Virus record (IMG/VR): IMGVR_UViG_3300042562_001598
Location: 186,001-250,000 of that record
Length of the DNA: 64,000 nt
Direction: 5' to 3' (one strand)
This document shows positions 22,211 through 49,178 of the stretch, in pieces. The first letter of the stretch is position 1; each line of letters opens with the position of its first letter. The position numbers and the translations under genes were made by a program. The notes beneath the pieces are model-generated. The model was not told the DNA's origin. It saw only the letters and a program-made list of their open reading frames with translations, and did not search any database.

Positions 22211-22285
22211 TTTTTTATTTTTTATCAAAACATACAGAAAATCCTTTAACAAAATAATGTTAAAGGATTTTTTTGTTAATTGATA

Positions 22286-22293
22286 TATTTATA
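22286..22293 (+). promoter_or_regulatory. Phage late-promoter motif TATTTAT(A), representative copy
   Basis: Found shortly upstream of >15 structural/leader genes (e.g. 243, 4790, 18931, 26412, 34004, 39933, 41822, 44264, 49297). Confidence 0.7.
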
Positions 22294-22306
22294 ATAAAAA
22301 ACTAAT

Positions 22307-22717
22307 ATGAAAAATTTATTTAATGACATTTCTCAAGAAGAGAAAAATAGAATCCTTGAGATGCACTCGGGTAAAAAAAATGTGATATCTGAACAAGAAA
22401 TTGGTGGTTACAAAGAAGGACCTGGTGACCCTCAAGGTGATGAACTTGACCACTATAATAAAATTGTAAAACCAAAATTGTTAGCTGTAGGTTTTAAAGA
22501 TGAATATGATAAAAATTTAAAACAATTTGGCACGGAGAATTCTTTAACTTATGGTGGACACAATAACGGTGTTAATGTCCTATGGGATAGAATAAAAGGG
22601 GTTTATCATGTGTGGGCCGGAAATGATAAGGGAAAACGACAATTCCAACTTGGTCCAAATGACCCAAAAGTTGTCGCTAATAAAGTTGTTCAGTACGCTT
22701 TATCATTAAAGAGATAA
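22307..22717 (+). CDS. Leader-family cargo protein
   Basis: MKNLFNDISQEEKNRILEMHSGKKNVISEQ leader identical to that of 26412. Confidence 0.75.
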   Translation: MKNLFNDISQEEKNRILEMHSGKKNVISEQEIGGYKEGPGDPQGDELDHYNKIVKPKLLAVGFKDEYDKNLKQFGTENSLTYGGHNNGVNVLWDRIKGVYHVWAGNDKGKRQFQLGPNDPKVVANKVVQYALSLKR

Positions 22718-22788
22718 TAAATGACAAATAAACCACCAATTATGGTGGTTTTTTTTGTTTTTATAATATTTTTATTTACATTTGTTCT

Positions 22789-23241
22789 ATGAAAAAAGAA
22801 ATCAACATAGTCAATAAGAAAGCGAAACACGAATACGAGTTTTTACAGACTTACGTATGCGGCGTTAAGCTAATCGGTTGTGAAGTAAAATCAATACGCC
22901 TAGGTAAGGTTTCCATATCCGAGGGGTATTGTTACTTCAACAATAACGAATTATTCATTAAAGGAATGAACATATCTGATTATGGTTACGGCACAGTCCA
23001 TGATAACACCTCAGATAGAAAGTTATTATTAAAACGGAAAGAGTTAAACAAATTAGAAAAAGAACTCGTAAAAGGCCTTACAATCGTTCCTTACAGGGTC
23101 TTTACAAATGAGAGAGGATTGATTAAAATAGAGATATCCCTATCTCGTGGTAAAAAGAACTACGATAAAAGAAATGACCTAAAGTCCAGGGATATTGATA
23201 GAGATAGTAAAAGAGAAATTAGTGGTCGGTTCACAAAATAA
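22789..23241 (+). CDS. smpB: SsrA-binding protein
   Basis: NKKAKHEY, GVKLIGCEVKSIR, RKLLL, RGKKNYDKR. Confidence 0.95.
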   Translation: MKKEINIVNKKAKHEYEFLQTYVCGVKLIGCEVKSIRLGKVSISEGYCYFNNNELFIKGMNISDYGYGTVHDNTSDRKLLLKRKELNKLEKELVKGLTIVPYRVFTNERGLIKIEISLSRGKKNYDKRNDLKSRDIDRDSKREISGRFTK

Positions 23242-25540: not shown

Positions 25541-26359
25541 ATGGAAAGAAATTATCAACTATTGAAAGATGTTTTATCGGTTCCGACTAAAACATATAAT
25601 GAAGGATTAATGGTGGAATTCATAACCAATTGGTTATCGGAGAATAACATCCCCTTCTATATTGACGAGTATCAAAATATTTACGCTACAAAACAAACTT
25701 TTGAGGTGGAATATTTCCCTTGTGTTATTGCACATACGGATACCGTTCATAACATTGACACTATCAATGTAAGAGAAGAAAATCTTAAAAACGCACAAGG
25801 TGAAATAAAACCTGCGTTAAAGGCTTATAATGATTTGGGTAATCCAACTGGTATTGGTGGTGATGATAAATGTGGCGTTTATGCTTGTCTTGAATTACTA
25901 AAAGAATTACCAAATCTAAAAGCTGGATTTTTCGTATCTGAAGAAACTGGATGTCACGGTTCTAAAAACGCGGACCCTGAATTTTTTAAGAATGTGGGGT
26001 ATGCTATTCAATTTGACGCTCCGGAGAACTGGATGGTTTCAGAATATTGTATGGGTGTTAAGTTATTTGATAGAGAGAGTGATTTCTTCAAGTCTTGTGA
26101 TTTTGTTATAAACGAAAACTTTAATGGTCGTCAATTATACCAAGCACATCCTTATACAGATGTTTATAAATTAAAACAGATTTTTAATTTTTCTTGTATT
26201 AATTTCTCAATCGGGTATTACGATTATCATACAAAATATGAATATGTAATTATTGAAGATGTTTATAGTGGTATTAAAACCGGGAAAGAAATGATTGAAA
26301 AACTAGGATATCAAAAATATACCTTAGAATACGAACAATCAACATATAACTTTTATTAA
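25541..26359 (+). CDS. M20/M28-family zinc peptidase
   Basis: AHTDTV, GGDDKCG, SEETG, terminal YH. Confidence 0.85.
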   Translation: MERNYQLLKDVLSVPTKTYNEGLMVEFITNWLSENNIPFYIDEYQNIYATKQTFEVEYFPCVIAHTDTVHNIDTINVREENLKNAQGEIKPALKAYNDLGNPTGIGGDDKCGVYACLELLKELPNLKAGFFVSEETGCHGSKNADPEFFKNVGYAIQFDAPENWMVSEYCMGVKLFDRESDFFKSCDFVINENFNGRQLYQAHPYTDVYKLKQIFNFSCINFSIGYYDYHTKYEYVIIEDVYSGIKTGKEMIEKLGYQKYTLEYEQSTYNFY

Positions 26360-26411
26360 GAGACTTCGGTCTCTTTTTTTTTTTGTGATATATTTATAAT
26401 AAAAAACTAAT

Positions 26412-27113
26412 ATGAAAAATTTATTTAATGACATTTCTCAAGAAGAGAAAAATAGAATACTTGAGATGCACTCAGGTAAAAAGAATGTAATTTCTGAACA
26501 AAATAGTCAACAAGTTTATAAAGAAATTGCGGATTATTTATATAATTCTATGAAAGGGTTAAGTTCCTCTGAGGATTCAGAAAATGTTGAAACAATTATA
26601 CTTAATAGAATAAAAAATAAAAATGATTGGGAAGGAGTTAAAAAGGCTTTTGGGGTAAAAGACGGTGAAAATTTGGAACAGTGGTTAAAAGGTGAACTTA
26701 GACTTGATTATAATGAAATAATGGGAATGATAAATCGAAATGACGGTAATTTTAAGAAAGAAGATTCAATGTATAATCCGGGGTCTAAAATTAGTTTAAT
26801 TACTAATAGACAGTTTCTTATGTCAAGAGCATATCAATATGCAAGTATTATGGGTGACAAAAAAGAATTAGAATTGGATATTAATAACGCAATAATTATT
26901 CGTAGAGATAAAGATGGGATAGTTATTAAAACTGATTATGTTGATTATTACCCAATTCCTGAATATACAAGAGGAAAATCTACACCAAAACAAGAAAGAT
27001 TAACAAAACCTTGTATAAAAATCCCTTTTAAAGATGTAATTGAATGGAGAGATGGTACTTTACAAATTAGATGGTTTTCTGATTTTGTTAAAAGTAGGGT
27101 AGTACCTTGTTAA
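26412..27113 (+). CDS. Leader-family cargo protein
   Basis: First 30 aa identical to 22307; unrelated thereafter. Confidence 0.75.
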   Translation: MKNLFNDISQEEKNRILEMHSGKKNVISEQNSQQVYKEIADYLYNSMKGLSSSEDSENVETIILNRIKNKNDWEGVKKAFGVKDGENLEQWLKGELRLDYNEIMGMINRNDGNFKKEDSMYNPGSKISLITNRQFLMSRAYQYASIMGDKKELELDINNAIIIRRDKDGIVIKTDYVDYYPIPEYTRGKSTPKQERLTKPCIKIPFKDVIEWRDGTLQIRWFSDFVKSRVVPC

Positions 27114-27142
27114 ATTCTAAATTAATATAAAAAAAAAGAGGA

Positions 27143-27655
27143 CTATTTGTCCTCTTTCCTTTTTCTTGTTTTCTTAGATGTCTCTTGGAGACTTAACTTC
27201 TTTTTCTACTGAAACAAGGGTATATAACACACCTTCCACCATATTTCCTTTGATAATCTCTTCGGATACAAAATCCTCAATCTTATCTTGGATTGTTCTT
27301 TTGATTGGTATAGCTTCGTAAGTCTCGTCAAATCCAACATCGGAAATCAAATGTAAAATAGTTTCATCAAATGTGATGTTATAGTTCAAACCAACTAATC
27401 TTTTTGATAACTTATCTAATTCCAATGTTACAATTTTTTTAACATCTTCCTTCACCAACGAATTAAAGATAACAACCTCATCAATTCTATTTAAGAATTC
27501 CGGAGTAAAGAATTTTTTAAGTTCTTTTTTAAGAATTTCTCGTTTGTATTCTTCTTCAGCATAAGAGTTATTACCGGTTTTAAATCCCACACCTGAACCA
27601 AAGTCTTGTAATTTTTTAACCCCCACATTTGATGTCATAATGATGACACAATTTT
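27143..27655 (-). pseudogene. 3' fragment of a second, divergent clpC allele
   Basis: NCVIIMTSN...PEFLNRIDE; GAR motif changed to EAI; frameshift separates the basic tail LQETSKKTRKRKEDK*. Confidence 0.8.
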
Positions 27656-27850
27656 TAATTTTTCTTGTATTAATTTCTCAATTGGGTATTATGATTATCA
27701 CACAAAATATGAATATGTAATTATTGAGGATGTTTATAGTGGTATTAAAACCGGGAAAGAAATGATTGAAAAACTAGGATATCAAAAATATACCTTGGAA
27801 TATGAACAACCAATTTATAACCTTTATTAAGAGACTTCGGTCTCTTTTTT
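27651..27850 (+). repeat. Duplicate of the peptidase 3' end plus terminator (26180-26379)
   Basis: ~200-bp near-identical direct repeat, including AAGAGACTTCGGTCTCTT. Confidence 0.9.
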
Positions 27851-27881
27851 ATTTATTGGTATTTATTAATAAAATGTTATT

Positions 27882-28274
27882 ATGAAAAAATTAATAATTA
27901 CTGAAGAAGAAAAAAATAGAATACTTAATCTTCATTTAAACGAACAAAGTAAAGAAAATTCCGCAGTTAAATTTATAAAAAATTTATTGGTAACAAATCC
28001 AAATTTATTTAATGGTAAAAAACCTTTAAGTTTATTAGAAAAACCATTGAATGATTTTAACTCAAAAAACCCTTCCGATAGATTAGATATACCATCATTA
28101 GTAAAACAGTTGTCGGTTAATAATTCACCTTTTAAAATGACCACATTCAACATTCAAACCTATGAACCAAAACGCATTACTAGGTTAGATTATGACTTAA
28201 ACAACATTGGTTTTACCTTAACAAAAAATGAAATTGATAACTCAATACAGGGTGGTGTTAAATTAAAATTTTAA
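27882..28274 (+). CDS. Leader-family cargo protein
   Basis: MKKLIITEEEKNRILNLHLNEQ. Confidence 0.75.
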   Translation: MKKLIITEEEKNRILNLHLNEQSKENSAVKFIKNLLVTNPNLFNGKKPLSLLEKPLNDFNSKNPSDRLDIPSLVKQLSVNNSPFKMTTFNIQTYEPKRITRLDYDLNNIGFTLTKNEIDNSIQGGVKLKF

Positions 28275-28325
28275 GAGACTTCTGTCTTTTTTTTTATTTT
28301 AAGTATTTATTACTAAAACACTATT

Positions 28326-29144
28326 ATGAAAAACTTATTTATACTAACCGAAGAAGAAAAAAATAGAATTTTAAATCTTCATGAAAGTGCCACAAAACGA
28401 CATTATTTAGTTGAACAAGAAATAAAACAAGGACCTGAAGGTGACCCATATCAATATAAAAAAATTGGTGACGAATATTTTTACGCTAAGAAAAATGACG
28501 ACAATTGGACTAAAGTTAATAACCCTAAAGGTATTACAGATATCAAAAATACTATTTTTAATTCATCAATAAATAAATTAACAACTCAAAAACCTGAAGC
28601 TTATTTATTATTTGATGGTACTAATTTAAATTGGATTGAGAATGGTAAAGTTATTAAACGATGGTCAGCAATTTCAGGAAGAACTAAATTTAATACTTTT
28701 GGTGATAAAAATTTGGAGAAATTAGTTAAAAAATATGGGGCTAATAGGATGGAATTTATGAAAATTAAAGACCAAGGTCCTATACCTGTTGGTGAATATT
28801 CTATAGGTCAAGTACAAAAACGAACAAATGGTGACGCTCAAAGATTTATACAAGGTAAAACGGATAAAGAGTTACAACGTATTATGTTACAAAATGTTAA
28901 ACACGATTGGAATTTAGGAACAGAAACTGATATGGTTGCTTGGGGTAATTACAGATTACCAATAACTAAAGTTGGTGAAACTGAAACTTTTGGTAGAGGT
29001 AGTTTTTACATTCATGGTGGTGGTATTCCAGGTTCTATTGGTTGTATTGATTTATTAACTCAAATGGATGATTTCGCAAACTATTTCACAAATTGGAAGA
29101 ATAAAACAAAAAAAAATAAATTAAAATTAGTTGTTAAGTATTAA
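28326..29144 (+). CDS. Leader-family protein with Tlde1/DUF2778 L,D-transpeptidase-like domain
   Basis: Leader ...EEKNRILNLHESATKRHYLVEQ; GPIPVGEY; RGSFYIHGGG..GSIGCI. Confidence 0.75.
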   Translation: MKNLFILTEEEKNRILNLHESATKRHYLVEQEIKQGPEGDPYQYKKIGDEYFYAKKNDDNWTKVNNPKGITDIKNTIFNSSINKLTTQKPEAYLLFDGTNLNWIENGKVIKRWSAISGRTKFNTFGDKNLEKLVKKYGANRMEFMKIKDQGPIPVGEYSIGQVQKRTNGDAQRFIQGKTDKELQRIMLQNVKHDWNLGTETDMVAWGNYRLPITKVGETETFGRGSFYIHGGGIPGSIGCIDLLTQMDDFANYFTNWKNKTKKNKLKLVVKY

Positions 29145-29551
29145 TTTTACTAATAAATAAATAAATAAATAAATAAAAATGAAAAAAGTAGTTAAATTAA
29201 CTGAAAGAGAATTAAATAATCTTATTAGGAGAATGATTAACGAAGATATGGAATCTTCTTTAGAATCAAAAGGTGGTAAATGGTTAAGTGTTAAAAACAA
29301 AATACCCGCAAACCCACCTAAAATGTCTCTTGGTGCTTTAAAAGAAAGATTGGGTAATGACGGATATTCTAATGATAATAGTGATGAACCTTTAGCAAAC
29401 ATTCAAGTTTTTGTTCATGGAGCAAAAAACCCTGGTGAGAACATTCCGATGAGATTATTATTCCGTAACCCAACAGACCCAACAGACAGAAAATGGTATG
29501 AACTAGTTGCTTAATAAAAAAAAAATAAATTAAAATTAGTTGTTAAGTATT
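29108..29551 (+). repeat. 35-bp direct repeats (29108-29142, 29517-29551) flanking one gene
   Basis: A9-TAAATTAAAATTAGTTGTTAAGTATT occurs at both positions. Confidence 0.85.
29179..29514 (+). CDS. Cargo protein with MKKVVKLTE leader
   Basis: MKKVVKLTERELNNLIRRMINE. Confidence 0.7.
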   Translation: MKKVVKLTERELNNLIRRMINEDMESSLESKGGKWLSVKNKIPANPPKMSLGALKERLGNDGYSNDNSDEPLANIQVFVHGAKNPGENIPMRLLFRNPTDPTDRKWYELVA

Positions 29552-29583
29552 GATATTTTTTTATATTTTTGTAAAAAAAAGAT

Positions 29584-30090
29584 ATGAAACTAATAACATT
29601 ATTACTCGTAATTACAACATCACTTTATGGTCAGTCAAAAATAGAGATTGCTAAAGAATTACAAAAACAATATAACCCCCCTAATAAGAATTATGTTGTT
29701 TTTATTGATTACTCAAAACCAATTTCAGAAAAAAGATTATACGTGATTGATATGAAAACATCAGAAACAATTTTAACCACTAAAGTTGCTCACGGAATAA
29801 ATAGTGGTAAAGAATACGCTACTGAATTTAGTAACACTGATAAAAGTTTAAAAAGTAGTTTAGGTGTTTATGTTACTCAAGAAACATATTATGGTTACTT
29901 TGGTTACTCTTTAAGAATTAATGGTTTAGATAAAACCAATTCTAATGCGAGACAAAGAAATATTATATTTCATTCTAACACAAAAATGAGTAAAAAATGG
30001 TCTTGGGGTTGTTTCTCAACAGATGAAAAAACTAACAAAAAACTAATTAATATAATAAAAAATGGGTGTTTAGTTTATGTTTATAAATAA
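29584..30090 (+). CDS. Secreted murein L,D-transpeptidase (YkuD_2-like)
   Basis: Signal peptide; IDYSKP, VAHG, SSLG, IIFH...SWGCF. Confidence 0.85.
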   Translation: MKLITLLLVITTSLYGQSKIEIAKELQKQYNPPNKNYVVFIDYSKPISEKRLYVIDMKTSETILTTKVAHGINSGKEYATEFSNTDKSLKSSLGVYVTQETYYGYFGYSLRINGLDKTNSNARQRNIIFHSNTKMSKKWSWGCFSTDEKTNKKLINIIKNGCLVYVYK

Positions 30091-30101
30091 AAAAAAGGGG
30101 A

Positions 30102-32153
30102 TTATTCGTCCCCTTTTTTCTTTCTACCTCTTTTCAAAGGTTCTTTATTTTTAGTTATAATAACTTCTTTATCTACAACATCAACCACACTTGAGTCCCC
30201 CTCGTTAATTTCACCTTTCAAAATCTCTTCAGAGATGAAGTCTTCAATTTTATCTTGAATAGCTCTTTTAATAGGTCTTGCTCCATAGTTTTCATCATAA
30301 CCAACATCAGATATCAATTCAGTTACTTTATCGGTATAACTAAAGTTATATTTGATTTTAGCAAGACGACCCATTAGTTTATCTAATTCTAAAGTAACAA
30401 TCTTTTTAACATTCTCTTTATCTAAAGATTTAAACATAATAACATCATCAATTCTGTTTAAGAATTCAGGCGCGAAGAATTTTTTAAGTTCAGCTTTAAG
30501 GATATCGTTTTTAAGTTCTTGTTCAATATATTCGTTACCACCATTTTTAAATCCAACACCAGTTCCGAAGTCTTGTAATTTTTTAACACCTAAATTAGAT
30601 GTCATAATGATAAGACAGTTTTTAAAGTTAATTTTTTTACCTAAAGAGTCAGTTAAGTGACCTTCATCTAACATTTGTAAAAGTGTTGAGAAGATATTTT
30701 TATCCGCTTTTTCAATCTCATCAAATAAGATAACAGAGTAAGGTTTATTTTTAACTTCATTAGTTAAGAATCCACCTTCTTCGTGGGCAACATAACCTGG
30801 AGGAGAACCTATAAGTCTTGAGATTGTATGTTTTTCTTGATATTCTGACATATCAATTCTAATCATATTTTCTTCACTACCAAAAATTTCTTTTGCTAAT
30901 TGTTTTGCTAAATAAGTTTTTCCTACTCCGGTAGAACCTAAAAAGATGAATGAACCAATTGGACGATTTGGGTCTTTAATACCTAATCTATTTCTTCTGA
31001 TAGCTTTTGCGATTTTAACCACGGCTTCAGGTTGACCAACAACTTTATCAGCTAAAGCTTGTTCTAAATTAACTAATGCTTTAGTATCGTCAATTGATAA
31101 TTTTGATACAGGTATTTTAGTCATATTAGATACAACTTCATATACTAGTTCTTCAGGAATTTCTCTTTTATGAGCTTGTAATTCCGCTTCAAATTTTATT
31201 TTTTCATCCTCTAATTTTGATAGAATTCGTTTTTCTTTATCTCTAAGATTAGCCGCTTCTTCATAGTTTTGTTTTTTAACTACCTCAATTTTTTCCAATT
31301 TAATATCTGACGCTTGTTGTTTTAATTTTTCAATTATTTCAGGCATCTTAATATCAACTTGACTTCTCGCACCAACTTCGTCTAAAATATCAAAAGCTTT
31401 ATCCGGGAATTCTCTGTCGGTAATGTATCTATCCGCTAAATCAACACAAATTTCTAAAATAGAATCAGTGTAATTTACTTTATGATATGATTCATATTTT
31501 TCTTTAGCGTTTTTCAAGATGATTAATGTTTCTTCTTTTGTTGCAGAATCAACAATAACCTTTTGAAATCTTCTTTCTAATGCTCCGTCTTTTTCAAAGT
31601 TTTTTCTATATTCATCTAAAGTTGTTGCTCCAACACATTGGATTTCACCTCTTGCTAAAGCTGGCTTAAAGATGTTTGACGCATCCATTGACCCGGATGA
31701 ATTTCCCGCACCAACAATGGTGTGAATCTCATCAATGAATACAATTATGTTTGGAGAGTTTTGTAACTCCTCAATAATAACTTTCATTCTTTCTTCAAAT
31801 TGTCCACGGTATTTTGTTCCTGCAACAATGGATGTCATATCTAAAGATACGATTCTTTTATCCATTAAGTTTCTTGGACAATCCCCATTATATATTTTAA
31901 TTGCAAGACCTTCAACGATTGCAGTTTTACCACAACCAGGTTCACCTAATATAATAGGATTATTTTTCTTTCTACGAGAAAGAATTTGAGCAATCCTAGT
32001 GATTTCTCTTTCACGACCAACTACAGGGTCTAATTTACCTTCTTCAGCTAACTTTATTAAGTCTCTACTAAAGTTATCTAATACAGGTGTTGTTGATTCT
32101 GAGATGGAATTTGATTTTTTTCCTTTTTCGTCATTATCTGAAAATTCTATCAT
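30102..32153 (-). CDS. clpC: ClpC-like AAA+ unfoldase lacking the N-terminal Clp-repeat domain
   Basis: Walker A motifs GEPGCGKT and GSTGVGKT; FIDEIH; UVR M-domain QNYEEAANLRD; GARP. Confidence 0.92.
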   Translation of the reverse strand: MIEFSDNDEKGKKSNSISESTTPVLDNFSRDLIKLAEEGKLDPVVGREREITRIAQILSRRKKNNPIILGEPGCGKTAIVEGLAIKIYNGDCPRNLMDKRIVSLDMTSIVAGTKYRGQFEERMKVIIEELQNSPNIIVFIDEIHTIVGAGNSSGSMDASNIFKPALARGEIQCVGATTLDEYRKNFEKDGALERRFQKVIVDSATKEETLIILKNAKEKYESYHKVNYTDSILEICVDLADRYITDREFPDKAFDILDEVGARSQVDIKMPEIIEKLKQQASDIKLEKIEVVKKQNYEEAANLRDKEKRILSKLEDEKIKFEAELQAHKREIPEELVYEVVSNMTKIPVSKLSIDDTKALVNLEQALADKVVGQPEAVVKIAKAIRRNRLGIKDPNRPIGSFIFLGSTGVGKTYLAKQLAKEIFGSEENMIRIDMSEYQEKHTISRLIGSPPGYVAHEEGGFLTNEVKNKPYSVILFDEIEKADKNIFSTLLQMLDEGHLTDSLGKKINFKNCLIIMTSNLGVKKLQDFGTGVGFKNGGNEYIEQELKNDILKAELKKFFAPEFLNRIDDVIMFKSLDKENVKKIVTLELDKLMGRLAKIKYNFSYTDKVTELISDVGYDENYGARPIKRAIQDKIEDFISEEILKGEINEGDSSVVDVVDKEVIITKNKEPLKRGRKKKGDE

Positions 32154-32353
32154 ATTATTATTATTATTTTGTTTTGTTAATGATATCAATAATTATAACA
32201 AAAATTATTCTATGAATCAATATTGACAATTTGTCAGTATATTTTTTTATAAAATGTCAAATTGTCATATAAATAAGTCATTTTACTATAAATTTGACTT
32301 TGGTATAAAATTAGTTATAATTATTTCAAATAAAAAATTAAAACAAAAAAATT

Positions 32354-39932: not shown

Positions 39933-41798
39933 ATGGAAAATAATCAAAACAATCAAAATAATTTAACTGTTTGGCAAAGATTATCAAAAGCGTTTGGTCC
40001 TAATTCATTATTGAATCAAGACTATCCGACTTATAAAGTTGATAAAAAAGAGTTGTTAAAAACAACTTCTAAAGCTGAATACGAAAAAGAAAAGTTACAG
40101 GCTCAACAAACTTATTACTTAGGTAATCAGTGGACTAAAATTGAAAGTAACTTATATACTCAAGCGGTTTATTATGAACCAACTCGTTTAGCATCATTTT
40201 ATGATTATGAAAGTATGGAGTACACACCTGAAATTTCTGCAGCATTAGACATTTATGGTGAGGAATCAACAACGGTTGACCAAAATGGTCATATGTTACA
40301 AGTATTTTCTGAATCAAAACGAATCAAATCAATCTTAACGGATTTATTCAACAACGCTTTAGATATTAATACAAATTTACCTATGTGGACAAGAAATACT
40401 TGTAAATATGGGGATAATTTCGTTTACCTAAAATTAGATGGTGAAAAAGGTATTGTTGGTGCTATGCAACTTCCTAATATTGAAATAGAACGATTAGAGA
40501 GAGGTATGGCAGCTAAATCCGCTAATGTTGAGGAATTACCTGAAAATAGAGGGTTAAGGTTCAAGTGGAAATCTAAAGATATGGAATTTAACACTTGGGA
40601 GATTGCTCACTTTAGATTATTAGGTGATGATAGAAAATTACCTTATGGTACTTCTATGTTGGAGAAAGCGAGAAGAATTTGGAAACAATTATTACTATCT
40701 GAAGACGCGATGTTAATTTATAGAACATCAAGAGCACCTGAGAGAAGAGTATTTAAAGTTTTCGTTGGTAATATGGATGATAAAGATGTTGAACCATATG
40801 TACAACGTGTTGCGAATAAATTCAAAAGAAGTCAGGTTGTTGATTCAAGTTCAGGAAATGTTGATATGAGATTTAATCAAATGGCTGTTGACCAAGATTA
40901 TTTCATCCCTGTTCGTGACCAAGCGGCTGCTTCACCTATTGAGACTTTACCCGGTGCTCAAAACTTAGCTGAAATCGCGGATATTGAGTATATTCAAAAG
41001 AAATTATTAACGGCTCTTAGAGTCCCTAAAGCCTTTTTAGGGTTTGAAGAACCTGTTGGTGGTGGTAAAGATTTATCGTTAATGGATATTCGTTTCGCAA
41101 GAACAATTAATAGAATACAAAATTGTATGATTGCCGAATTAAATAAAATTGCAATTATTCATTTATTTTTATTAGGTTTTGAAGATGAGTTATCTAATTT
41201 TACATTAGGTTTAACTAACCCATCAAGTCAAGCGGATTTATTAAAAATTGACATATTCAAAGAAAAATTGTTGGCTTATAAAGATGCTGTAGCACCTATT
41301 GAGGGTATTGCTCCGGTTTCTGTATCTTGGGCTAAAAAACATATCCTAGGATTTTCTGATGAAGAAATTAAACTTGATTTACAACAACAACGTATTGAGA
41401 AAGCGGCCGGTGCTGAATTAACTAATACCGCAACAGTTATTACTCATACAGGTATCTTTGATAATATTGATAAGTTATATGGTAATAAACCTGGAGCTCC
41501 ACAAGCTGCCGGTGCAACACCACCAGCAGAACCTGGAAGTGAAGGTGGCGGAGAAGATTTTGGTGCGTTAGGCGGAGCCCCTGAGATGGGTGGTGAAGAA
41601 TTAGGTGGAACTCCACCTCCAGGACCTGAAGCAGGTGGTGAAGCTGGGGTAACACCAGAATCATTTAAGAAAACCAACCATAACATTTTATTAGAAAATG
41701 AAGGGCTATTTAATGACGATTCTTACATCAATTTATCTAAAGGTGAAAATTATTTAGGAGAAATTGAAGACCAATTGGATAAACTTCTGAATGGTTAG
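39933..41798 (+). CDS. Portal protein (T4 gp20-like)
   Basis: EDAMLIYRTSRAPERRVF, DYFIP, IETLPG, ALRVP. Confidence 0.95.
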   Translation: MENNQNNQNNLTVWQRLSKAFGPNSLLNQDYPTYKVDKKELLKTTSKAEYEKEKLQAQQTYYLGNQWTKIESNLYTQAVYYEPTRLASFYDYESMEYTPEISAALDIYGEESTTVDQNGHMLQVFSESKRIKSILTDLFNNALDINTNLPMWTRNTCKYGDNFVYLKLDGEKGIVGAMQLPNIEIERLERGMAAKSANVEELPENRGLRFKWKSKDMEFNTWEIAHFRLLGDDRKLPYGTSMLEKARRIWKQLLLSEDAMLIYRTSRAPERRVFKVFVGNMDDKDVEPYVQRVANKFKRSQVVDSSSGNVDMRFNQMAVDQDYFIPVRDQAAASPIETLPGAQNLAEIADIEYIQKKLLTALRVPKAFLGFEEPVGGGKDLSLMDIRFARTINRIQNCMIAELNKIAIIHLFLLGFEDELSNFTLGLTNPSSQADLLKIDIFKEKLLAYKDAVAPIEGIAPVSVSWAKKHILGFSDEEIKLDLQQQRIEKAAGAELTNTATVITHTGIFDNIDKLYGNKPGAPQAAGATPPAEPGSEGGGEDFGALGGAPEMGGEELGGTPPPGPEAGGEAGVTPESFKKTNHNILLENEGLFNDDSYINLSKGENYLGEIEDQLDKLLNG

Positions 41799-43162: not shown

Positions 43163-43897
43163 ATGAGTAATATAGAAATTAATAAAACTAATGTCCTTAA
43201 TAAAAAATTAATTCTAATTGAATACGATGCGGGTTATATTTCACCAAAAGATGAGTATAATTCTAAAATAATTAAAGAGTCTGATGGTATGTTAGACCAT
43301 TCAAAACCTTTTGAATTTTACGCTGTATTACAAAAATACGATACCCCTAATAGAAATGGTAGAGTATACCCTAAAAGACTATTAGAAAGAGAAGCTCAGA
43401 ATTATAGAAAAATGATTGAGAAAGGAACTGCGTTATCAGAATTAAACCATCCTGAATCATCATTAATTGACTTAGATAGAGTATCACATTTAATTACTGA
43501 TGTATGGTGGGAAGGACCTGCGTTAATCGGTAAAATAAAACTATTAACAACACCAGGTTACCACGAAAGAGGTATTGTATCATCTAAAGGTGATTTGGCT
43601 GCCAATTATTTAAGACAAGGGGTTACTTTAGGTATCTCATCAAGAGGTGTAGGTTCGCTTAAAAAAGTGGGTGAACAAAATGAAGTTCAAGACGACTTTG
43701 AACTAATTTGTTTTGACTTAGTTTCATCACCATCAACACCGGGGGCGTATCTATACCATAACGAAGGTGATAGACAGAAATATGATGAAAACCTTGACGA
43801 AGAAAAAAAGACAACTATAGAGCGACAAGTCGGAAGTAATGGTAATAAATCACTTGACTTAATGAAAAAATTAAACGATTATTTAGGAAACAAATAA
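43163..43897 (+). CDS. Prohead core protease (T4 gp21-like)
   Basis: NRNGRVYP, ELNHP, GISSRGVGS, DLVSSPS. Confidence 0.95.
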   Translation: MSNIEINKTNVLNKKLILIEYDAGYISPKDEYNSKIIKESDGMLDHSKPFEFYAVLQKYDTPNRNGRVYPKRLLEREAQNYRKMIEKGTALSELNHPESSLIDLDRVSHLITDVWWEGPALIGKIKLLTTPGYHERGIVSSKGDLAANYLRQGVTLGISSRGVGSLKKVGEQNEVQDDFELICFDLVSSPSTPGAYLYHNEGDRQKYDENLDEEKKTTIERQVGSNGNKSLDLMKKLNDYLGNK

Positions 43898-44263: not shown

Positions 44264-45631
44264 ATGGCAAAAGAAAAATCTTTAGTTGAGGACGCAATCA
44301 TCCAAATGAGAAATTTGGAAGAAGCTGTTGCGGAAAATGCAAAAGGAATACTTGCTTCTACAATGAAGGAAGAAATCAAAGAACTAGTAAAAGAATCTCT
44401 GACCGAACAAGAAGACGAGATTGACACAGATGTTGAAATGGATTTACCTACGGATGACGAAGGTGATGAAATGGATATTGATAATATTGACGATATGGAA
44501 GACGAAGAAGACTTTGATGAGTTTGGTGATGACGAAGACGTTATTGACCTAACTGATATTGAAGACGATTCTGAAATCTTACGTGTATTTAGTTTATTAG
44601 GACCTGAAGATAATGTTATAGTTAAGAAAGACGAGACTGGTAACATTAGCTTAAAAGATGGTGATAAAGAATACATGATTGTTGGTGAAAACGAAGACGA
44701 AGATGCTGACATGGAAATGTTTGAAGGTTTCGGAGAATTTGAAGACGACGAAGAACAAGAAGAAGACGAACTTTACGAAGAAGATGAATTTTCAAATGAA
44801 GATGAATCTATTGACGATATCGTTTCTAAAGTATTTGGAGAAGGTCAAGACTTTGAGGATAATGAACTTGAAGAAAATGATGAAGAAGTTGTTTACGAAA
44901 TTGAAATGGACGACGAAGATTTAATGGATGAAGAAGATGAATATCTTGAGGAATCTAAATCAACAATTAAACCTAAAGGTGTTGGTATGGGTAAACCAAA
45001 ATTCTCTTATAATTCTAAACCAAATCAAGGAAAAGGTTTCAACACTAAAATGAAAGAAGCCCCTAAATCTGTTGGAACTGGAAAAGCGAAATTTGAATTT
45101 AAAGAAGACGAAGATTTTGAAAAAATAGAAACTAAAGAAGCTGCTCGCACTATCGGAAATGGTTCTAAATCAGGTCGTGGTCTTAGAAAAGGTATTACTC
45201 CTAATAGAAACTTGGAATTCCCTATTAAAGAAAATACTGACGCTAAAGAACTACAAATCCTTAGAGAAAAAAACGAAGAGTATAGAAAAGCTTTAAATAT
45301 TTTCAGAAATAAATTAAATGAGGTTGCTGTTTTTAACTCAAACTTAGCTTACGCTACTCGTTTATTTACTGAATGTACTACTTCAAAACAAGAAAAAATA
45401 AACATATTGAAAAGATTTGATGGTGTTGAAACGATTAAAGAATCTAAAAACTTATATCAAAGTCTTAAAAATGAATTGTCAGTTAAATCTGGTAAACCAA
45501 TCAATGAATCTATTGAGTCTAAATTAGACAAAACACATTCAACTGGTTCTGCCGTTAATTTAATTGAATCAAAAACTTACGAAAATCCACAATTCCTTAG
45601 AATGAAAGATTTGATGAGTAAATTAAAATAA
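44264..45631 (+). CDS. Prohead scaffold/core protein (gp22-like)
   Basis: Very acidic, coiled-coil; directly upstream of the major capsid gene. Confidence 0.75.
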   Translation: MAKEKSLVEDAIIQMRNLEEAVAENAKGILASTMKEEIKELVKESLTEQEDEIDTDVEMDLPTDDEGDEMDIDNIDDMEDEEDFDEFGDDEDVIDLTDIEDDSEILRVFSLLGPEDNVIVKKDETGNISLKDGDKEYMIVGENEDEDADMEMFEGFGEFEDDEEQEEDELYEEDEFSNEDESIDDIVSKVFGEGQDFEDNELEENDEEVVYEIEMDDEDLMDEEDEYLEESKSTIKPKGVGMGKPKFSYNSKPNQGKGFNTKMKEAPKSVGTGKAKFEFKEDEDFEKIETKEAARTIGNGSKSGRGLRKGITPNRNLEFPIKENTDAKELQILREKNEEYRKALNIFRNKLNEVAVFNSNLAYATRLFTECTTSKQEKINILKRFDGVETIKESKNLYQSLKNELSVKSGKPINESIESKLDKTHSTGSAVNLIESKTYENPQFLRMKDLMSKLK

Positions 45632-45662: not shown

Positions 45663-47507
45663 ATGGGAGCATTATTAGAATCAGGTCTTGTTGGTAACAT
45701 CGGACTAAAACACCTTAAAGTTATCAAAGAAGATACTATTAACAAATGGGATAAATTAGGATTCCTAGAAGGTCTTAAAGGACACTTAAGAGAAAACGTA
45801 GCTCAATTATATGAGAACCAAGCGTCTTTCTTGATTAACGAAGCTACTTCAGAAGGTTCATCAGGTTCATTTGAAACTGTTGTATTCCCTATCGTAAGAA
45901 GAGTTTTCTCAAAATTATTGGCGAATGAAATCGTATCTGTACAAGCAATGAACTTACCAATTGGTAAATTGTTCTTCTTCGTACCTAAAATTCAAGGTTA
46001 CAATGGTGGTGTTGAAGGTCAACAATCAGGTGACCACTACGCACCAATAGGTTCTCCAGGAAACTACTCAGGTAGTACAGAAGCTGGATATACAGGTGCT
46101 GGAGCTTACGCTAAAAATCTTTATGATTTGTTTTATGAAGGTACTGAACCAGGATTGAACCCAGGTGGTTTATTTGATTACTCTAAAGGTAGATGGTCAG
46201 CTATTACTTCTACAGTAGCTATTCAACAATGGTCTAATGGTAATTTAGTTGACGCTGTAATTTCTGGTACTTCAACAAGTGCTGGTGTTATTGCTGGAGG
46301 TAATACAAGAAAAGTAATTGTAAAACTTTGTGGTTTCCAAGATACTGGAGCTGGTAAATTAATTGGACCTGATGGAAATGAAATGGACACAGAAACTTTC
46401 TTGTCTGATTTAATTATCTACACTGGTTCTGGTTTAACAGTTGCCGCTGGTAGTCCATGTACAGTTTCAACAGGAGCTTTATTGTATAGAGTTGTTACTC
46501 AACAATATGGTCAAGGTATCGTAAATGGTGCTTCAGGAACTAGAACTCAAACTTCTTGGCCAACAAACAACGGTGGTTCATTCCAAAGTCCATGTAACGC
46601 TAACGGATGTATCTTCTTAGAAGTTGATTTGTCTTGTCCAGCTTGTGCTGATTGTGGTTCTGATTCATTAGATGGATACACTGGAACAACTATTTCTACA
46701 GGTTTAACTTCATCATCTTTCAACGCTGCTTGGAGACGTTACGAAGAATTAGAATTTGAAGATAAAATCGGTGAGGTTTCATTTGATTTAGAGTCTGTTA
46801 CTGTATCTGTTACAGAAAGAAAATTAAGAGCACAATGGTCTCCTGAGTTAGCTCAAGACGTTGCAGCTTTCCATAACATTGATGCTGAAGCAGAATTAAC
46901 TGCTTTGTTATCTGAACAAGTTGCGGCAGAGATTGACCGTGAAATCTTAAGAGATTTACGTAAAGGTGCTGCTTGGACTTTGAGATGGGATTACAATGGA
47001 TGGAGAAGAGTAGGAGCTACAACTTCTTATACACAAAAAGACTGGAACCAAACTTTGATTACAGCTATTAACCAATTGTCAGCACAAATTCACAAATCTA
47101 CTTTAAGAGGTGGTGCTAACTGGATTGTAGTTTCTTCTGAGGTTTCTGCTATCTTTGATGACTTAGAGTACTTCCACGTATCTAACGCTTCAGCTGAACA
47201 AGACCAATATAACATGGGTATTGAAAGAGTTGGAACATTAGCTGGTCGTTACCAAGTTTACCGTGACCCTTACTTCCCAGCTAACCAAGTGTTAATTGGA
47301 CATAAAGGTACTTCATTGTTAGACACAGGTTATATCTACGCACCATACGTGCCGTTGCAATTAACTCCAACAATGTATAACCCTTTTAACTTTACTCCAA
47401 TAAAAGGAATAATGACAAGGTATGCTAAAAAAATGGTAAACAACCGCTTTTACGCCCGAATTACTGTTGATGGTGTTAGAACATTTGATATTAAAGAATT
47501 AAGATAA
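45663..47507 (+). CDS. Major capsid protein (T4 gp23-like)
   Basis: RKLRAQWSPELAQD...IDAEAEL, EIDREI, YAPYVPL, GIMTRY. Confidence 0.96.
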   Translation: MGALLESGLVGNIGLKHLKVIKEDTINKWDKLGFLEGLKGHLRENVAQLYENQASFLINEATSEGSSGSFETVVFPIVRRVFSKLLANEIVSVQAMNLPIGKLFFFVPKIQGYNGGVEGQQSGDHYAPIGSPGNYSGSTEAGYTGAGAYAKNLYDLFYEGTEPGLNPGGLFDYSKGRWSAITSTVAIQQWSNGNLVDAVISGTSTSAGVIAGGNTRKVIVKLCGFQDTGAGKLIGPDGNEMDTETFLSDLIIYTGSGLTVAAGSPCTVSTGALLYRVVTQQYGQGIVNGASGTRTQTSWPTNNGGSFQSPCNANGCIFLEVDLSCPACADCGSDSLDGYTGTTISTGLTSSSFNAAWRRYEELEFEDKIGEVSFDLESVTVSVTERKLRAQWSPELAQDVAAFHNIDAEAELTALLSEQVAAEIDREILRDLRKGAAWTLRWDYNGWRRVGATTSYTQKDWNQTLITAINQLSAQIHKSTLRGGANWIVVSSEVSAIFDDLEYFHVSNASAEQDQYNMGIERVGTLAGRYQVYRDPYFPANQVLIGHKGTSLLDTGYIYAPYVPLQLTPTMYNPFNFTPIKGIMTRYAKKMVNNRFYARITVDGVRTFDIKELR

Positions 47508-47558: not shown

Positions 47559-49178
47559 TTATAATAAAATTTCATATTTTAAATTACCGGTATCCCATAT
47601 TTTATCGTAACCTAATTCAGACATTATTTGAGATTCTGTTTTATTTTTATCATAACCTAACTTAACTAATCTATCTTTTCTATAGTTAAACCTATGTTCT
47701 CTAACATCATATTTTTTAGTATAACTATAATTAGGTTTTGTTTCCCCAATATAATTAAACCCTGTTTTAGAATAAAAACAAAATTCATCTGAAGGTGACC
47801 AATTTCTGTTAGAATATGTTATAATTTTTTTAGGTGAATATTCCTTTATAAAATGTTTTAATAATTTTGTAAATCCACCAACTACATTTACGGAACAATA
47901 ACGATATAATTCATATTCATCTATAGTTTTATTTTTATTACCTAAAATTTTTCTTAATGAACCAAATGACATAACGGCAACAATAATATCATTATGTTTT
48001 AGACCAAAGTATATTGTTGATTTATCATTACCTTGTAAATGGTTAGTCTTAAGAAAATTACTTTTTTCATCACTACTTATAGTTGTTATTTCACAATTTC
48101 TCGCATAAATTTTAGTATTATTTTTCTTCAATAAATTAGTAATTCTATTTTTTACTATATTTTTCTTTGTTAACCATTCGTCAGAAAAAATATGAATTAA
48201 TTGAATGTTTTTTTCAAGACATTTTAATGTTTTATCTATATGATAATTTTTATGTTTCCCCCTATTTTCTGAGTGCCAATATAATCCATTATATTCTATA
48301 GCTATATTATAATCAGGAAAATACAAATCTAATTCAACACCATTTAATTGTTTCTTATCACAAACTTTAACATCAACACCTAATGATTTAACATATTCCT
48401 CAATTTCTTTTTCAGATTTACTTCTGTAGTAAAAATTAGTTTCACATTTTAATAAATTAGATACAAATGTGTCTTTTGTTTTTTTAGAAATTAAAGAGTT
48501 TTCGCCAAATTTATTTTTATATTCCTCGGTTGTTATATTATGTGATGACAAATGAGTGTTAGATAACATTTTAAATTGTTCGTCACATAATTCACAAGTG
48601 ACATAATTATCTGTTTCATTAAATAACACATCTCTGTCAATAGAATTTGATAACGTTGTGAATAGTTTAAGTTCTGAAGGGAATTTTAACACATAATCAC
48701 TAATTGAGTTGTGTGCGTTTTCAATATGTTTAGATAACGCCCCGGATTTATTAACAATATCTTTGGTGACCCATCCACATTCTAAACATTTTATTGTTGT
48801 TGATTCCGGTTTAGTGATTAAATTAAAGTAAGTAAAATGCCAATAATTCCCAGTATCCGTTAAATACATTCTTCTTTTGAATGAAGATGGGATAACTTCA
48901 TTAGGGTAACATTTTTTAATATGATTAGTTACTCCACCACTTTTATTTTCAATGTCATCATATTCTTTACCACAACACTTACAAGATAGTATAATATTTT
49001 TATTATCTAACTCAATCTTTTTGACCTGTTTATGTTTGATTTGACCACCTTTAGTTTTTAATGGTATGTTATTACTTAATAAAATTTTTTTAATTTTAAG
49101 TTTACCAACCTTAAATTCTTTAGCCAAGGTCTCAATAGAGACATTATCTTTATACTTTTCAATTATTATATCTTCCAT
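47559..49178 (-). CDS. Free-standing homing endonuclease (zinc fingers + PD-(D/E)xK/Vsr-like domain)
   Basis: Three CxxC...H fingers; ELDLYFPDYNIAIEYNGLYWH; convergent with the capsid gene. Confidence 0.8.
   Translation of the reverse strand: MEDIIIEKYKDNVSIETLAKEFKVGKLKIKKILLSNNIPLKTKGGQIKHKQVKKIELDNKNIILSCKCCGKEYDDIENKSGGVTNHIKKCYPNEVIPSSFKRRMYLTDTGNYWHFTYFNLITKPESTTIKCLECGWVTKDIVNKSGALSKHIENAHNSISDYVLKFPSELKLFTTLSNSIDRDVLFNETDNYVTCELCDEQFKMLSNTHLSSHNITTEEYKNKFGENSLISKKTKDTFVSNLLKCETNFYYRSKSEKEIEEYVKSLGVDVKVCDKKQLNGVELDLYFPDYNIAIEYNGLYWHSENRGKHKNYHIDKTLKCLEKNIQLIHIFSDEWLTKKNIVKNRITNLLKKNNTKIYARNCEITTISSDEKSNFLKTNHLQGNDKSTIYFGLKHNDIIVAVMSFGSLRKILGNKNKTIDEYELYRYCSVNVVGGFTKLLKHFIKEYSPKKIITYSNRNWSPSDEFCFYSKTGFNYIGETKPNYSYTKKYDVREHRFNYRKDRLVKLGYDKNKTESQIMSELGYDKIWDTGNLKYEILL

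What the first reader, a model, noticed from the sequence alone, without database searches (positions are those of the whole stretch)
25541..30110. Cargo hotspot between peptidase and clpC is present as two haplotypes in tandem
Seen: peptidase > cargo A < clpC 3' fragment | peptidase 3' 200 bp + terminator > four cargo genes < full clpC. The clpC fragment is a clearly different allele (GAR to EAI, frameshifted basic tail), and the junction at ~27651 lies in a TTTTTAA microhomology shared by both parents. Inference: an illegitimate crossover between two related phages stacked both versions of a hypervariable locus, a direct record of how the injected-cargo repertoire grows.
Basis: partly seen in the sequence, partly recalled or inferred. 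Interest (0 to 1): 0.65.

Follow-up and report, generated by a model that had tools for sequence, protein, structure and literature searches.

The report
Two cassette-slot versions joined in tandem
In an uncultured T4-like freshwater jumbo phage, a rare recombination accident between two related phages joined two versions of a fast-changing gene slot end to end and left dead stubs of both flanking genes as proof. It is a clean natural example of a known way that phages gain genes, not a new kind of system.

Summary
The order is peptidase (25541-26359), cargoA (26412-27113), a dead clpC 3' stub (27133-27650, minus strand), a dead peptidase 3' stub with its terminator (27651-27850), four genes (27882-30090) and the full clpC (30102-32189, minus strand). 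The join lies in 6-8 shared bases (27651-27658).

It is not an assembly error. Two other contigs carry the same join at 100% identity. None of about 250 related loci has such stubs.

The clpC stub is a foreign allele. It diverged from the resident gene under purifying selection (dS 1.6, dN/dS 0.17) and groups with another clade. Since then it lost its GAR motif and gained a 2-base frameshift. Close relatives (L009, L010) carry the right-hand version alone. A distant backbone (L112) carries peptidase > cargoA < clpC, with the cargoA cassette 96-99% identical.

The slot is empty in 56 of 79 relatives and holds 1-6 genes in 23.

The phage is T4-like (portal, gp21-type protease and gp23-type capsid protein genes). 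Most slot genes share an N-terminal leader of about 29 residues that ends in (L/I)-x-E. This matches a T4-type capsid-targeting propeptide, but packaging and injection are inferred only.

Read mapping was not possible.

The parts
25541..26359 (+). Full peptidase gene (272 aa). It is the conserved left flank of the slot.
   Evidence: phrog_4191 'peptidase' E 1e-33. Weak Peptidase_M42 match, E 9e-4, below the cut-off. 300 relatives in IMG/VR.
26358..26378 (+). Terminator hairpin and T-run after the peptidase gene. It marks the left edge of the cargoA cassette.
   Evidence: Terminator scan. Homology to L112/L113 starts at the T-run.
26391..26403 (+). Upstream motif TATTTATAATAAA, 8 nt before the cargoA ATG.
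   Evidence: The motif class occurs 26 times in the genome against 2.5 in shuffles. It also precedes the gp21 protease and the scaffold gene.
26412..27113 (+). cargoA (233 aa): a leader of residues 1-30 ending VISE|Q, then a folded body.
   Evidence: The cassette is 96-99% identical in the divergent backbone L112/L113. AF2 model: leader pLDDT below 50, body 75-97. No Pfam or PHROG match.
27129..27163 (.). Two-way terminator hairpin. It overlaps the old clpC stop (27133-27135).
27133..27650 (-). Dead 3' stub of a foreign clpC allele. The open frame left is 27174-27638. A 2-nt deletion lies near 27195, and GAR has changed to EAI.
   Evidence: It is 92-93% aa and about 85% nt identical to the clpC of L067, L068, L050 and L053, against 66% aa and 77% nt to the resident clpC.
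27651..27658 (.). Recombination joint: 6-8 nt of microhomology, (A)TTTTT(AA).
   Evidence: Chance of 6 or more shared bases is about 0.002-0.003.
27651..27830 (+). Dead 3' stub of the peptidase gene (codons 214-272 and the stop). It has no start codon.
   Evidence: It is collinear with the peptidase-c1 junction of L009 and L010.
27829..27850 (+). Second copy of the peptidase terminator hairpin.
27882..28274 (+). c1 (130 aa), with leader MKKLIITEEEKNRILNLHLNE|Q.
   Evidence: 90% aa identical in L009 and L010, right after the peptidase gene.
28326..29144 (+). c2 (272 aa): leader plus an L,D-transpeptidase-like domain.
   Evidence: Pfam Tlde1_dom E 4.7e-8 and YkuD E 8.9e-7, both above their cut-offs.
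29179..29514 (+). c3 (111 aa), with a leader of another type ending MINE|D. It is flanked by 41-nt direct repeats at 29108-29148 and 29517-29557.
29584..30090 (+). c4 (168 aa): signal-peptide-like N-terminus and a YkuD_2 L,D-transpeptidase domain. It does not carry the leader.
   Evidence: Pfam YkuD_2 E 4e-45.
30102..32189 (-). Full resident clpC-like double AAA+ ATPase (695 aa). It is the conserved right flank of the slot.
   Evidence: Pfam AAA_2, AAA_lid_9, AAA and ClpB_D2-small. 98% aa identical in L009 and L010.

Best explanation
The interval between the peptidase gene and clpC is a hyperplastic cassette slot of an uncultured T4-like jumbo phage (282 kb, 30% GC).

Each cassette is a self-contained unit. 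A terminator hairpin marks its edge. Then come a short conserved upstream motif, an N-terminal leader of about 29 residues, and a variable body. Cassettes move between backbones with break points at the hairpins.

In this strain a different event took place. Two related genomes were in the same cell. Parent X carried peptidase > cargoA < clpC. Parent Y carried peptidase > c1 c2 c3 c4 < clpC. They were joined by microhomology-mediated illegitimate recombination. X was broken inside clpC, about 175 codons before its stop. Y was broken inside the peptidase gene at codon 214.

The product keeps X's intact peptidase gene and Y's intact clpC. It gains 1,471 bp. It carries both cassette sets, with the useless clpC and peptidase stubs between them. 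The clpC stub has since begun to decay.

Shown here: the architecture, the reality of the junction, the foreign origin of the stub, the microhomology, the variability of the slot and the movement of cassettes.

Inferred only: co-infection, and a single-step event. Also inferred is that the leader is a capsid-targeting propeptide cut by the gp21-type prohead protease after (L/I)-x-E, which would make leader-bearing products head-internal proteins delivered with the DNA.
For: Architecture and repeats.

The junction occurs in two further contigs at 100% identity. No other locus among about 250 relatives has duplicated flanks.

Stub against resident clpC: dS 1.57, dN 0.27. Stub against the donor clade: dS 0.7-0.95, dN/dS 0.04-0.06. 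The stub has 8 nonsynonymous and 15 synonymous unique changes; controls have 0-2 nonsynonymous. These include the conserved GAR motif, and there is also a 2-nt deletion. Tree of 131 unique clpC 3' ends: the stub sits in a donor clade (support 0.90) and the resident gene in another (0.999).

Peptidase copies: 3 of 10 coding differences match polymorphisms of L009 or L010.

Microhomology of 6-8 nt, P about 0.001-0.003.

Unstacked forms of each version in relatives: peptidase > c1 in L009/L010; a c2-like gene, c3 and c4 next to clpC in L197; peptidase > cargoA < clpC in L112/L113.

Slot contents: empty in 56 of 79 loci and 1-6 genes in 23; 47 unique proteins in 20 or more body families.

T4-like head module: Portal_T4, Peptidase_S77 and Gp23.

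Leader: 56 of 59 unique leader proteins that have an E-Q pair carry L or I at P3, and information content falls from 2-4 bits to below 1 bit right after it. The same cargoA body is joined to 6 or more leader types, with E-Q invariant at the joint. AF2 leaves the leader unstructured and folds the body. The upstream motif is shared with the gp21 and scaffold genes.

T4 precedent: internal proteins are diverse and share only a capsid-targeting sequence (PMC3012670). gp21 cuts after Glu, for example at ITE-6 and LTE-619 of Alt (PMC5694885).
Against: All three contigs are 100% identical, so they sample one clonal lineage. They are not independent occurrences of the event.

Parent X was not found. 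The nearest clpC ends are about 85% nt identical, and cargoA occurs elsewhere only on a distant backbone.

X must have been a three-way mosaic, so two or more successive events are as possible as one.

For the leader there is no virion proteomics. It has no sequence likeness to T4's 10-residue targeting sequence, and (L/I)-x-E is a short motif. The protease-leader complex prediction gave no verdict.
Confidence: 0.8

Rival explanations
1. Two-step or three-parent origin. A Y-type genome first received a foreign piece, the cargoA cassette plus the 3' end of the donor's clpC. The left crossover was homologous, at the conserved hairpin and promoter element after the peptidase gene. The right crossover was illegitimate, into the peptidase gene of a second, slightly different Y-type genome. 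There was never one X parent with peptidase > cargoA < clpC.
For: Both peptidase ends belong to the window's own subclade (94-97% to L009 and L010), while the clpC stub belongs to another clade. The cargoA cassette has sharp edges at the hairpins and occurs at 96-99% in an otherwise 55-75% identical backbone. So hairpin-bounded exchange does happen.
Against: This needs more events than one crossover between two co-infecting genomes. The haplotype peptidase > cargoA < clpC does exist in nature (L112/L113). The final structure is the same under both models, so the present data cannot separate them.
Confidence: 0.15
2. Tandem duplication within one genome (unequal crossover between sister copies), followed by divergence of the copies in place and replacement of the cassettes.
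For: The layout is formally a 1,471-bp tandem duplication with direct repeats.
Against: Stub and resident clpC differ at saturated synonymous sites with dN/dS 0.17. They therefore diverged as working genes, not as a decaying copy. The stub is closer to another clade than to the resident gene. Flank divergences are very unequal, 7% against 23%. The peptidase copies differ at sites that are polymorphic in relatives.
Confidence: 0.03
3. Chimeric assembly of two co-occurring strains. The junction does not exist in any real molecule.
For: Related phages co-occur in the same samples. For example, 3300033984 also holds contig _000293, and B570J29032 holds three other related contigs. Reads could not be checked.
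Against: The same junction is present at 100% identity in the 282-kb record, in an 80-kb contig and in a 1.5-kb contig of another project. The two sides share only 6-8 nt, far less than an assembler's k-mer. The stubs show their own decay, a 2-nt deletion and loss of GAR, which strain mixing would not produce.
Confidence: 0.02
4. The leader is not a capsid-targeting propeptide. The slot genes would then be ordinary accessory genes expressed in the cell, for example envelope-directed or regulatory proteins. The shared N-terminus would serve another purpose such as translation, membrane association or binding a host factor.
For: No proteomic evidence exists. c4 and several slot genes in relatives have plain signal peptides instead of the leader. 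The L,D-transpeptidase domains act on peptidoglycan, outside the cytoplasm. The complex test gave no verdict.
Against: The leader always ends in (L/I)-x-E, and conservation collapses there. The phage has a gp21-type protease, whose family cuts after Glu (PMC5694885). The upstream motif is shared with the protease and scaffold genes. T4 internal proteins show the same pattern of a constant leader and diverse bodies (PMC3012670).
Confidence: 0.4

Closest known systems
Polymorphic internal-protein (IP) loci of T-even phages and the capsid-targeting sequence
   Same: The phage has a T4-type head module. A set of otherwise unrelated small proteins shares only a short N-terminal leader. The leader ends at a site that fits the prohead protease (cleavage after Glu with I or L at P3). 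The genes cluster in fast-changing loci (PMC3012670, which cites Repoila et al. 1994; PMC5694885).
   Different: The leader here is about 29 residues, not 10, and comes in several types. It shows no sequence likeness to T4's. Bodies include L,D-transpeptidase/Tlde1-like domains. Packaging, cleavage and injection have not been tested.
PeSL-mediated modular shuffling in the hyperplastic regions of T4-like phages
   Same: Variable genes sit between conserved core genes. Cassette edges are composite elements, a terminator hairpin plus a promoter-like motif, that recur between cassettes. The cargoA cassette was exchanged between backbones with break points exactly at these elements (PMC2839356, PMC4122927).
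   Different: The tandem join studied here does not lie in such an element. It lies inside two coding sequences with only 6-8 shared bases. The upstream motif is shared with the protease and scaffold genes, so it is probably not an early promoter.
Mosaicism of tailed phages by illegitimate recombination followed by selection (Hendrix-type model; from my own knowledge, not checked here)
   Same: Two unrelated sequences are joined at a chance microhomology. The survivor keeps all needed genes intact.
   Different: Such joins are usually inferred from clean gene boundaries after the debris is gone. Here both truncated relics are still present, so the break points can be read to the base.
Processed ejection-protein paralogue families of phiKZ-like and SPN3US giant phages
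   Same: Many head-internal proteins carry propeptides removed by a gp21-related protease after Glu (PMC5694885).
   Different: Those phages use A/S/G-x-E sites and a different protease family (S80). Here the protease is Peptidase_S77 and P3 is L or I.

Membership tests
Microhomology-mediated illegitimate recombination product (tandem stacking) | The junction joins sequences that are not homologous to each other. | tested here: met
   The antisense 3' part of clpC abuts peptidase codon 214. There is no similarity beyond the joint.
Microhomology-mediated illegitimate recombination product (tandem stacking) | A few shared bases at the joint, more than chance gives. | tested here: met
   6-8 nt shared. 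P(6 or more) = 0.002-0.003 in 200,000 simulated joins.
Microhomology-mediated illegitimate recombination product (tandem stacking) | The two halves come from different parental genomes. | tested here: met
   dS 1.57 with dN/dS 0.17 between the stub and the resident clpC. They fall in different clades. The peptidase copies differ at shared polymorphic sites.
Microhomology-mediated illegitimate recombination product (tandem stacking) | The junction is present in real molecules. | tested here: inconclusive
   Three contigs from separate assemblies carry it. No reads could be mapped.
PeSL-type cassette exchange (T4-like hyperplastic regions) | A composite terminator stem-loop plus promoter at the cassette edges. 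| tested here: met
   Hairpin copies at 26358-26375 and 27829-27846, and a degenerate copy at 28271-28299. Each is followed by the TATTTAT(W)A(H)TAAA motif.
PeSL-type cassette exchange (T4-like hyperplastic regions) | Exchange break points coincide with these elements. | tested here: met
   This holds for the cargoA cassette: 96-99% identical between the hairpins and 55-75% outside them.
PeSL-type cassette exchange (T4-like hyperplastic regions) | The tandem join itself lies in such an element. | tested here: not met
   The join at 27651-27658 lies inside coding sequence on both sides. The stacking event is therefore not a PeSL exchange.
PeSL-type cassette exchange (T4-like hyperplastic regions) | The promoter is an early, sigma-70-type promoter. 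| tested here: inconclusive
   The sigma-70 scan is no better than shuffles. The conserved motif also precedes the gp21 and scaffold genes. That points to late expression, but no transcript data exist.
T4-type capsid-targeted internal (ejected) proteins | The phage encodes a T4-type prohead protease and head module. | tested here: met
   Peptidase_S77 85.6 bits, Gp23 217 bits, Portal_T4 256 bits.
T4-type capsid-targeted internal (ejected) proteins | A short conserved N-terminal leader shared by otherwise unrelated proteins. | tested here: met
   79 unique leader proteins in the loci, about 13 in this genome and 20 or more body families. One body is joined to 6 or more leader types.
T4-type capsid-targeted internal (ejected) proteins | The leader ends at a protease site (Glu at P1, I or L at P3). 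| tested here: met
   56 of 59 proteins have L or I at P3. Conservation collapses after the site. The capsid protein has LYE-51 and INE-60 near the position aligned with the T4 mature N-terminus.
T4-type capsid-targeted internal (ejected) proteins | The leader is cleaved, and the protein is in the head and enters the host cell. | not testable with these tools
   No isolate and no proteomics. The complex prediction gave no verdict.
T4-type capsid-targeted internal (ejected) proteins | Sequence homology to the T4 capsid-targeting sequence. | not tested
   The leader is three times longer. I made no comparison, and no tool supplied the T4 sequence.

The most novel reading that the evidence does not exclude
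The leader of about 29 residues ending in (L/I)-x-E-Q may be a new, long, multi-type capsid-targeting propeptide system of a widespread group of freshwater T4-like jumbo phages. It would load a changing set of a dozen or more proteins per genome into the head for delivery with the DNA, including peptidoglycan L,D-transpeptidase/Tlde1-like enzymes. The stacked locus and the 41-nt scar around c3 would then show that this injected repertoire grows by repeated illegitimate tandem stacking, with later loss of the relics, in addition to hairpin-bounded cassette exchange.
Probability: 0.35. Interest if true: 0.65.

Novelty: new member of a known kind. Interest (0 to 1): 0.45.

Why it matters
Phage mosaicism is usually explained by rare illegitimate joins that selection then tidies up, so the untidy intermediate is seldom seen. 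Here both truncated flank relics survive. The break points, the microhomology used, the two parental alleles and the first steps of pseudogene decay can all be read directly.

The structure also shows a route of gene gain that costs no existing gene: 1.5 kb and one cassette were added.

The two peptidase copies share a 68-nt perfect stretch only 1.5 kb apart. This should allow easy loss of the insert by homologous recombination. Its presence at 100% identity in three assemblies therefore suggests either a recent origin or selection for cargoA.

The leader family gives a concrete, testable handle on which proteins an abundant uncultured phage group may package and inject.

Tried and rejected
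I did not try another route to the reads.

Search for the donor. Scanning IMG/VR with cargoA found the body only in the same strain. Scanning IMG/VR and the metagenome contigs with the clpC stub found nothing closer than 93% aa and about 85% nt, apart from the strain itself. An exact-pattern scan for the junction in IMG/VR found only the 80-kb contig.

Function of cargoA. There is no Pfam or PHROG match. The AF2 model is good for the body, but Foldseek against the PDB gave no whole-fold match. Only the helical N-part resembles one annexin repeat (probability about 1, E 0.07 over 73 columns). That is a lead, not a finding.

Complex prediction of the gp21-type protease with residues 1-48 of cargoA gave no verdict (score 0.00, controls not run). 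It is not evidence either way.

The sigma-70 promoter scan of the locus was no better than shuffles.

Comparing the left and right arms with L009 and L010 gave no clear sign of different parentage: about 95% on both sides and 91-92% over the peptidase stub plus c1.

Rejected explanations: tandem duplication within one genome, assembly chimera, and a functional truncated ClpC. The last is rejected because the sensor-2 Arg is lost, the tail is frameshifted, and the stub has no start signal of its own.

Full report
WHAT IS THERE. The window is bases 186001-250000 of a 282,192-bp IMG/VR virus record with 30% GC, estimated 96% complete. On the plus strand, ORF listing, repeat finding and alignment give the following order.
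- A 272-aa peptidase gene (25541-26359) with a terminator hairpin (26358-26375).
- cargoA (26412-27113).
- A two-way terminator (27129-27163).
- On the minus strand, the last ~175 codons of a clpC-like gene (27133-27650; the open frame left is 27174-27638).
- Directly abutting it, the last 59 codons and stop of the peptidase gene (27651-27830) with a second copy of the hairpin (27829-27846).
- Four genes: c1 27882-28274, c2 28326-29144, c3 29179-29514, c4 29584-30090.
- On the minus strand, the full 695-aa clpC-like double AAA+ ATPase (30102-32189).

The peptidase repeat is 212 nt at 93% identity, 1,471 nt apart. The clpC stub is 77% nt and 66% aa identical to the resident gene. Pfam sees ClpB_D2-small and the end of AAA_2 in the stub, YkuD/Tlde1 in c2 and YkuD_2 in c4.

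IS THE JUNCTION REAL? I used other assemblies instead. An 80-kb IMG/VR contig (3300033984_000410) is 100% identical to the window over all 20,816 bases compared, junction included. A 1,530-nt contig of another project (B570J29032_109831944) equals window 27090-28619 without a mismatch. That contig runs from the end of cargoA through the clpC stub, the joint, the peptidase stub and c1 into c2. One assembly does not normally yield the same 20 kb twice, so at least three assemblies produced this join. The two sides share only 6-8 bases, far below any assembler's word length. The stubs also carry decay of their own (see below), which strain mixing would not produce. I take the junction as real. 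All three contigs sample one clonal lineage.

TWO PARENTS, NOT ONE. I tested tandem duplication within one genome against a join of two different genomes.

(a) Over 145 codons the stub and the resident clpC differ with dS 1.57 (saturated), dN 0.27 and dN/dS 0.17. They therefore diverged as working genes.

(b) The stub is 92-93% aa and about 85% nt identical to the clpC ends of another clade (L067, L068, L050, L053, L195-198), with dN/dS 0.04-0.06. In a tree of 131 unique 435-nt clpC ends, the stub sits inside that clade (support 0.90). The resident gene sits with L009's contig in a different clade (support 0.999). The patristic distance between them is 1.48.

(c) The two peptidase ends differ at 10 coding sites. 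Six are unique to the stub, one is unique to the full gene, and three are states shared with L009 or L010, that is, standing polymorphisms.

(d) After the event the clpC stub decayed. At sites invariant in nine donor-clade sequences it has 8 nonsynonymous and 15 synonymous unique changes, against 0-2 nonsynonymous in each control. The changes include G108E and R110I in the conserved YGARPIKR motif. A 2-nt deletion near 27195 shifts the frame, although the old basic tail and stop remain readable.

THE JOINT. Compared with the resident clpC, the shared run is TTTTTAA (27652-27658). Compared with the donor clade, which reads ATTTTTGAA there, it is ATTTTT (27651-27656). In 200,000 simulated random joins of these genes, 6 or more shared bases occur in 0.2-0.3% and 7 or more in about 0.1%. 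This is the signature of microhomology-mediated illegitimate recombination.

BOTH VERSIONS ALSO OCCUR UNSTACKED. L009 and L010 belong to the window's subclade (peptidase 96% aa, clpC 98% aa, flanks about 95% nt). They carry peptidase > c1 (90% aa) and then clpC, without any stub. L010 has c1 alone. L009 has c1 plus two other leader genes. The window's peptidase stub, hairpin and c1 promoter are collinear with them. The right-hand half is therefore the resident arrangement. L197 carries a c2-like gene (its 3' half aligns) followed by c3 and c4 (about 80% nt overall) next to a donor-clade clpC.

For the left-hand half, a protein search with the cargoA body found a 96% identical protein. Its contig (L112, 21.8 kb; also L113) reads peptidase > cargoA < full clpC. 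There the cargoA cassette is 96-99% nt identical to the window, from the T-run after the peptidase hairpin to the A-run before the clpC hairpin. The flanks are only 55-75% identical. So cargoA is a cassette that recently moved between distant backbones, with edges at the hairpins.

The exact left-hand parent was not found. It must have combined a subclade-type peptidase gene, this cassette and a clpC end of a third clade. A two-step history therefore cannot be excluded.

HOW VARIABLE IS THE SLOT? Of 79 related loci with both flanks, 56 have an essentially empty gap (55-303 nt; 729 nt in two). The other 23 hold 1-6 genes in up to 4.9 kb. Together they hold 47 unique proteins in at least 20 unrelated body families. 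Three members of one about 95%-identical subclade have three different contents. Only the window's strain has duplicated flanks among about 250 loci examined. Stacking is therefore rare.

WHAT ARE THE CASSETTES? The phage is T4-like. It has Portal_T4 (39933-41798), a gp21-type prohead protease of family Peptidase_S77 (43163-43897), an acidic scaffold-like protein (44264-45631) and a Gp23-type capsid protein (45663-47507). The nearest cultured capsid proteins are only about 40% identical (Flavobacterium phage immuto, Microcystis phage Mel-JY01), so the host is unknown.

Most slot genes begin with one of a few conserved leaders, such as MKNLF..EEEKNRIL.LH.... About 13 genes of this genome carry such a leader. 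Among 79 unique leader proteins from the loci, 59 have an E-Q pair at about residue 29-30. Of these, 56 have L or I two residues before the E. Information content falls from 2-4 bits per position to below 1 bit immediately after the pair.

In an alignment of 30 cargoA homologues, the same body is joined to at least six leader types, and E-Q is invariant at the joint. AlphaFold leaves residues 1-31 of cargoA at pLDDT below 50 and folds the body at 75-97.

A motif TATTTAT(W)A(H)TAAA occurs 26 times in the genome against 2.5 in shuffles. It lies 6-14 nt before an ATG in 24 cases. It precedes the protease gene, the scaffold gene and eight leader genes.

In T4, the internal proteins are a diverse set that share only a capsid-targeting sequence (PMC3012670). 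gp21 cuts after Glu at sites such as ITE and LTE (PMC5694885). The leader therefore looks like a capsid-targeting propeptide, and its bearers like head-internal proteins delivered with the DNA. This is inference only. No proteomics exist, and a protease-leader complex prediction gave no verdict. c4, like some slot genes in relatives, has a signal-peptide-like N-terminus instead, so not everything in the slot is 'cargo' in this sense.

MECHANISM PROPOSED. Two related genomes replicated in one cell. An illegitimate crossover at (A)TTTTT(AA) joined genome X, broken inside clpC, to genome Y, broken inside the peptidase gene. The recombinant has one intact copy of each flank gene, both cassette sets and 1,471 extra bases. 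A phage that packages by the headful, as T4 does (from my own knowledge; not tested for this phage), could absorb that much. The two peptidase copies still share a 68-nt perfect stretch (26258-26325). Homologous recombination could therefore delete the insert. Its persistence suggests a recent origin or selection for cargoA.

COMPARISON WITH WHAT IS KNOWN. The slot behaves like a hyperplastic region of T4-like phages. Its hairpin-plus-motif elements behave like PeSLs (PMC2839356, PMC4122927). The cargoA exchange fits that model. The stacking join does not, because it lies in coding sequence. It is instead an unusually well-preserved case of the illegitimate-recombination step assumed by the classical mosaic model of phage evolution (my own knowledge).

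VERDICT. The finding is a new, clear instance of a known process, with a plausible but untested link to an injected-protein repertoire. Interest 0.45.

Noticed in passing
window 29108-29148 and 29517-29557: c3 is flanked by a 41-nt direct repeat (95% identical). The first copy is the last codons and stop of c2; the second is non-coding, after c3. A shorter copy also follows c3 in L197. It looks like an older, smaller scar of the same stacking kind.
   Followed up: partly
L196:6842-8086 (minus strand): A 414-aa leader-bearing gene contains, in frame, a 23-residue piece of clpC (GVKKLQDFGSGVGFKTGNSSY). The 70 nt are 86% identical to window 27561-27630, close to the break point used in the window. 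This may be another illegitimate event involving this part of clpC.
   Followed up: partly
L077:4359-8086 (minus strand); also L079: The clpC of L077 is split in its first Walker A loop into two ORFs. The ends look like intein halves (GEPG|C... and ...SHN|CGKT), and a 401-aa ORF without a Pfam match lies between them. This resembles a 'fractured gene' with a split intein. L079 has an interruption of about 0.56 kb near residue 430.
   Followed up: partly
whole genome; in the window e.g. 24123, 26391, 27860, 28304, 43139, 44240, 49275: The motif TATTTAT(W)A(H)TAAA occurs 26 times against 2.5 in shuffles, and 24 copies lie 6-14 nt before an ATG. It precedes the prohead protease gene, the scaffold gene and eight leader genes. 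It is likely a promoter or start-region signal of one expression class.
   Followed up: partly
window 22269-22747: A second cassette slot lies upstream of smpB. Gene 22307-22717 shares 128 nt (93%) of promoter plus leader with cargoA but has a different body. The slot is empty in L009 and has different contents in L010.
   Followed up: partly
window 26412-27113 and homologues P0001-P0040: The cargoA body occurs with at least six different leader types, and some homologues have an extra domain before the leader. E-Q is invariant at the joint. The helical N-part of the model resembles a single annexin repeat (weak, E 0.07).
   Followed up: partly
window 49297-49890 and 49905-50273: Two more leader-bearing genes lie downstream of the capsid gene cluster, after a minus-strand ORF (47559-49178). 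The second has the MNRSYSKIRHIQE...LLSEQ leader type, which is also found on some cargoA homologues.
   Followed up: no
window 22789-23241: The phage encodes an SmpB homologue (Pfam SmpB, E 1.4e-47).
   Followed up: no
window 47559-49178 (minus strand): A 539-aa ORF lies directly after the capsid gene on the opposite strand. It has a ROS/MucR-type zinc-finger match and a weak restriction-endonuclease-like match (MTES_1575, below the cut-off). It may be a homing-endonuclease-like insert.
   Followed up: no
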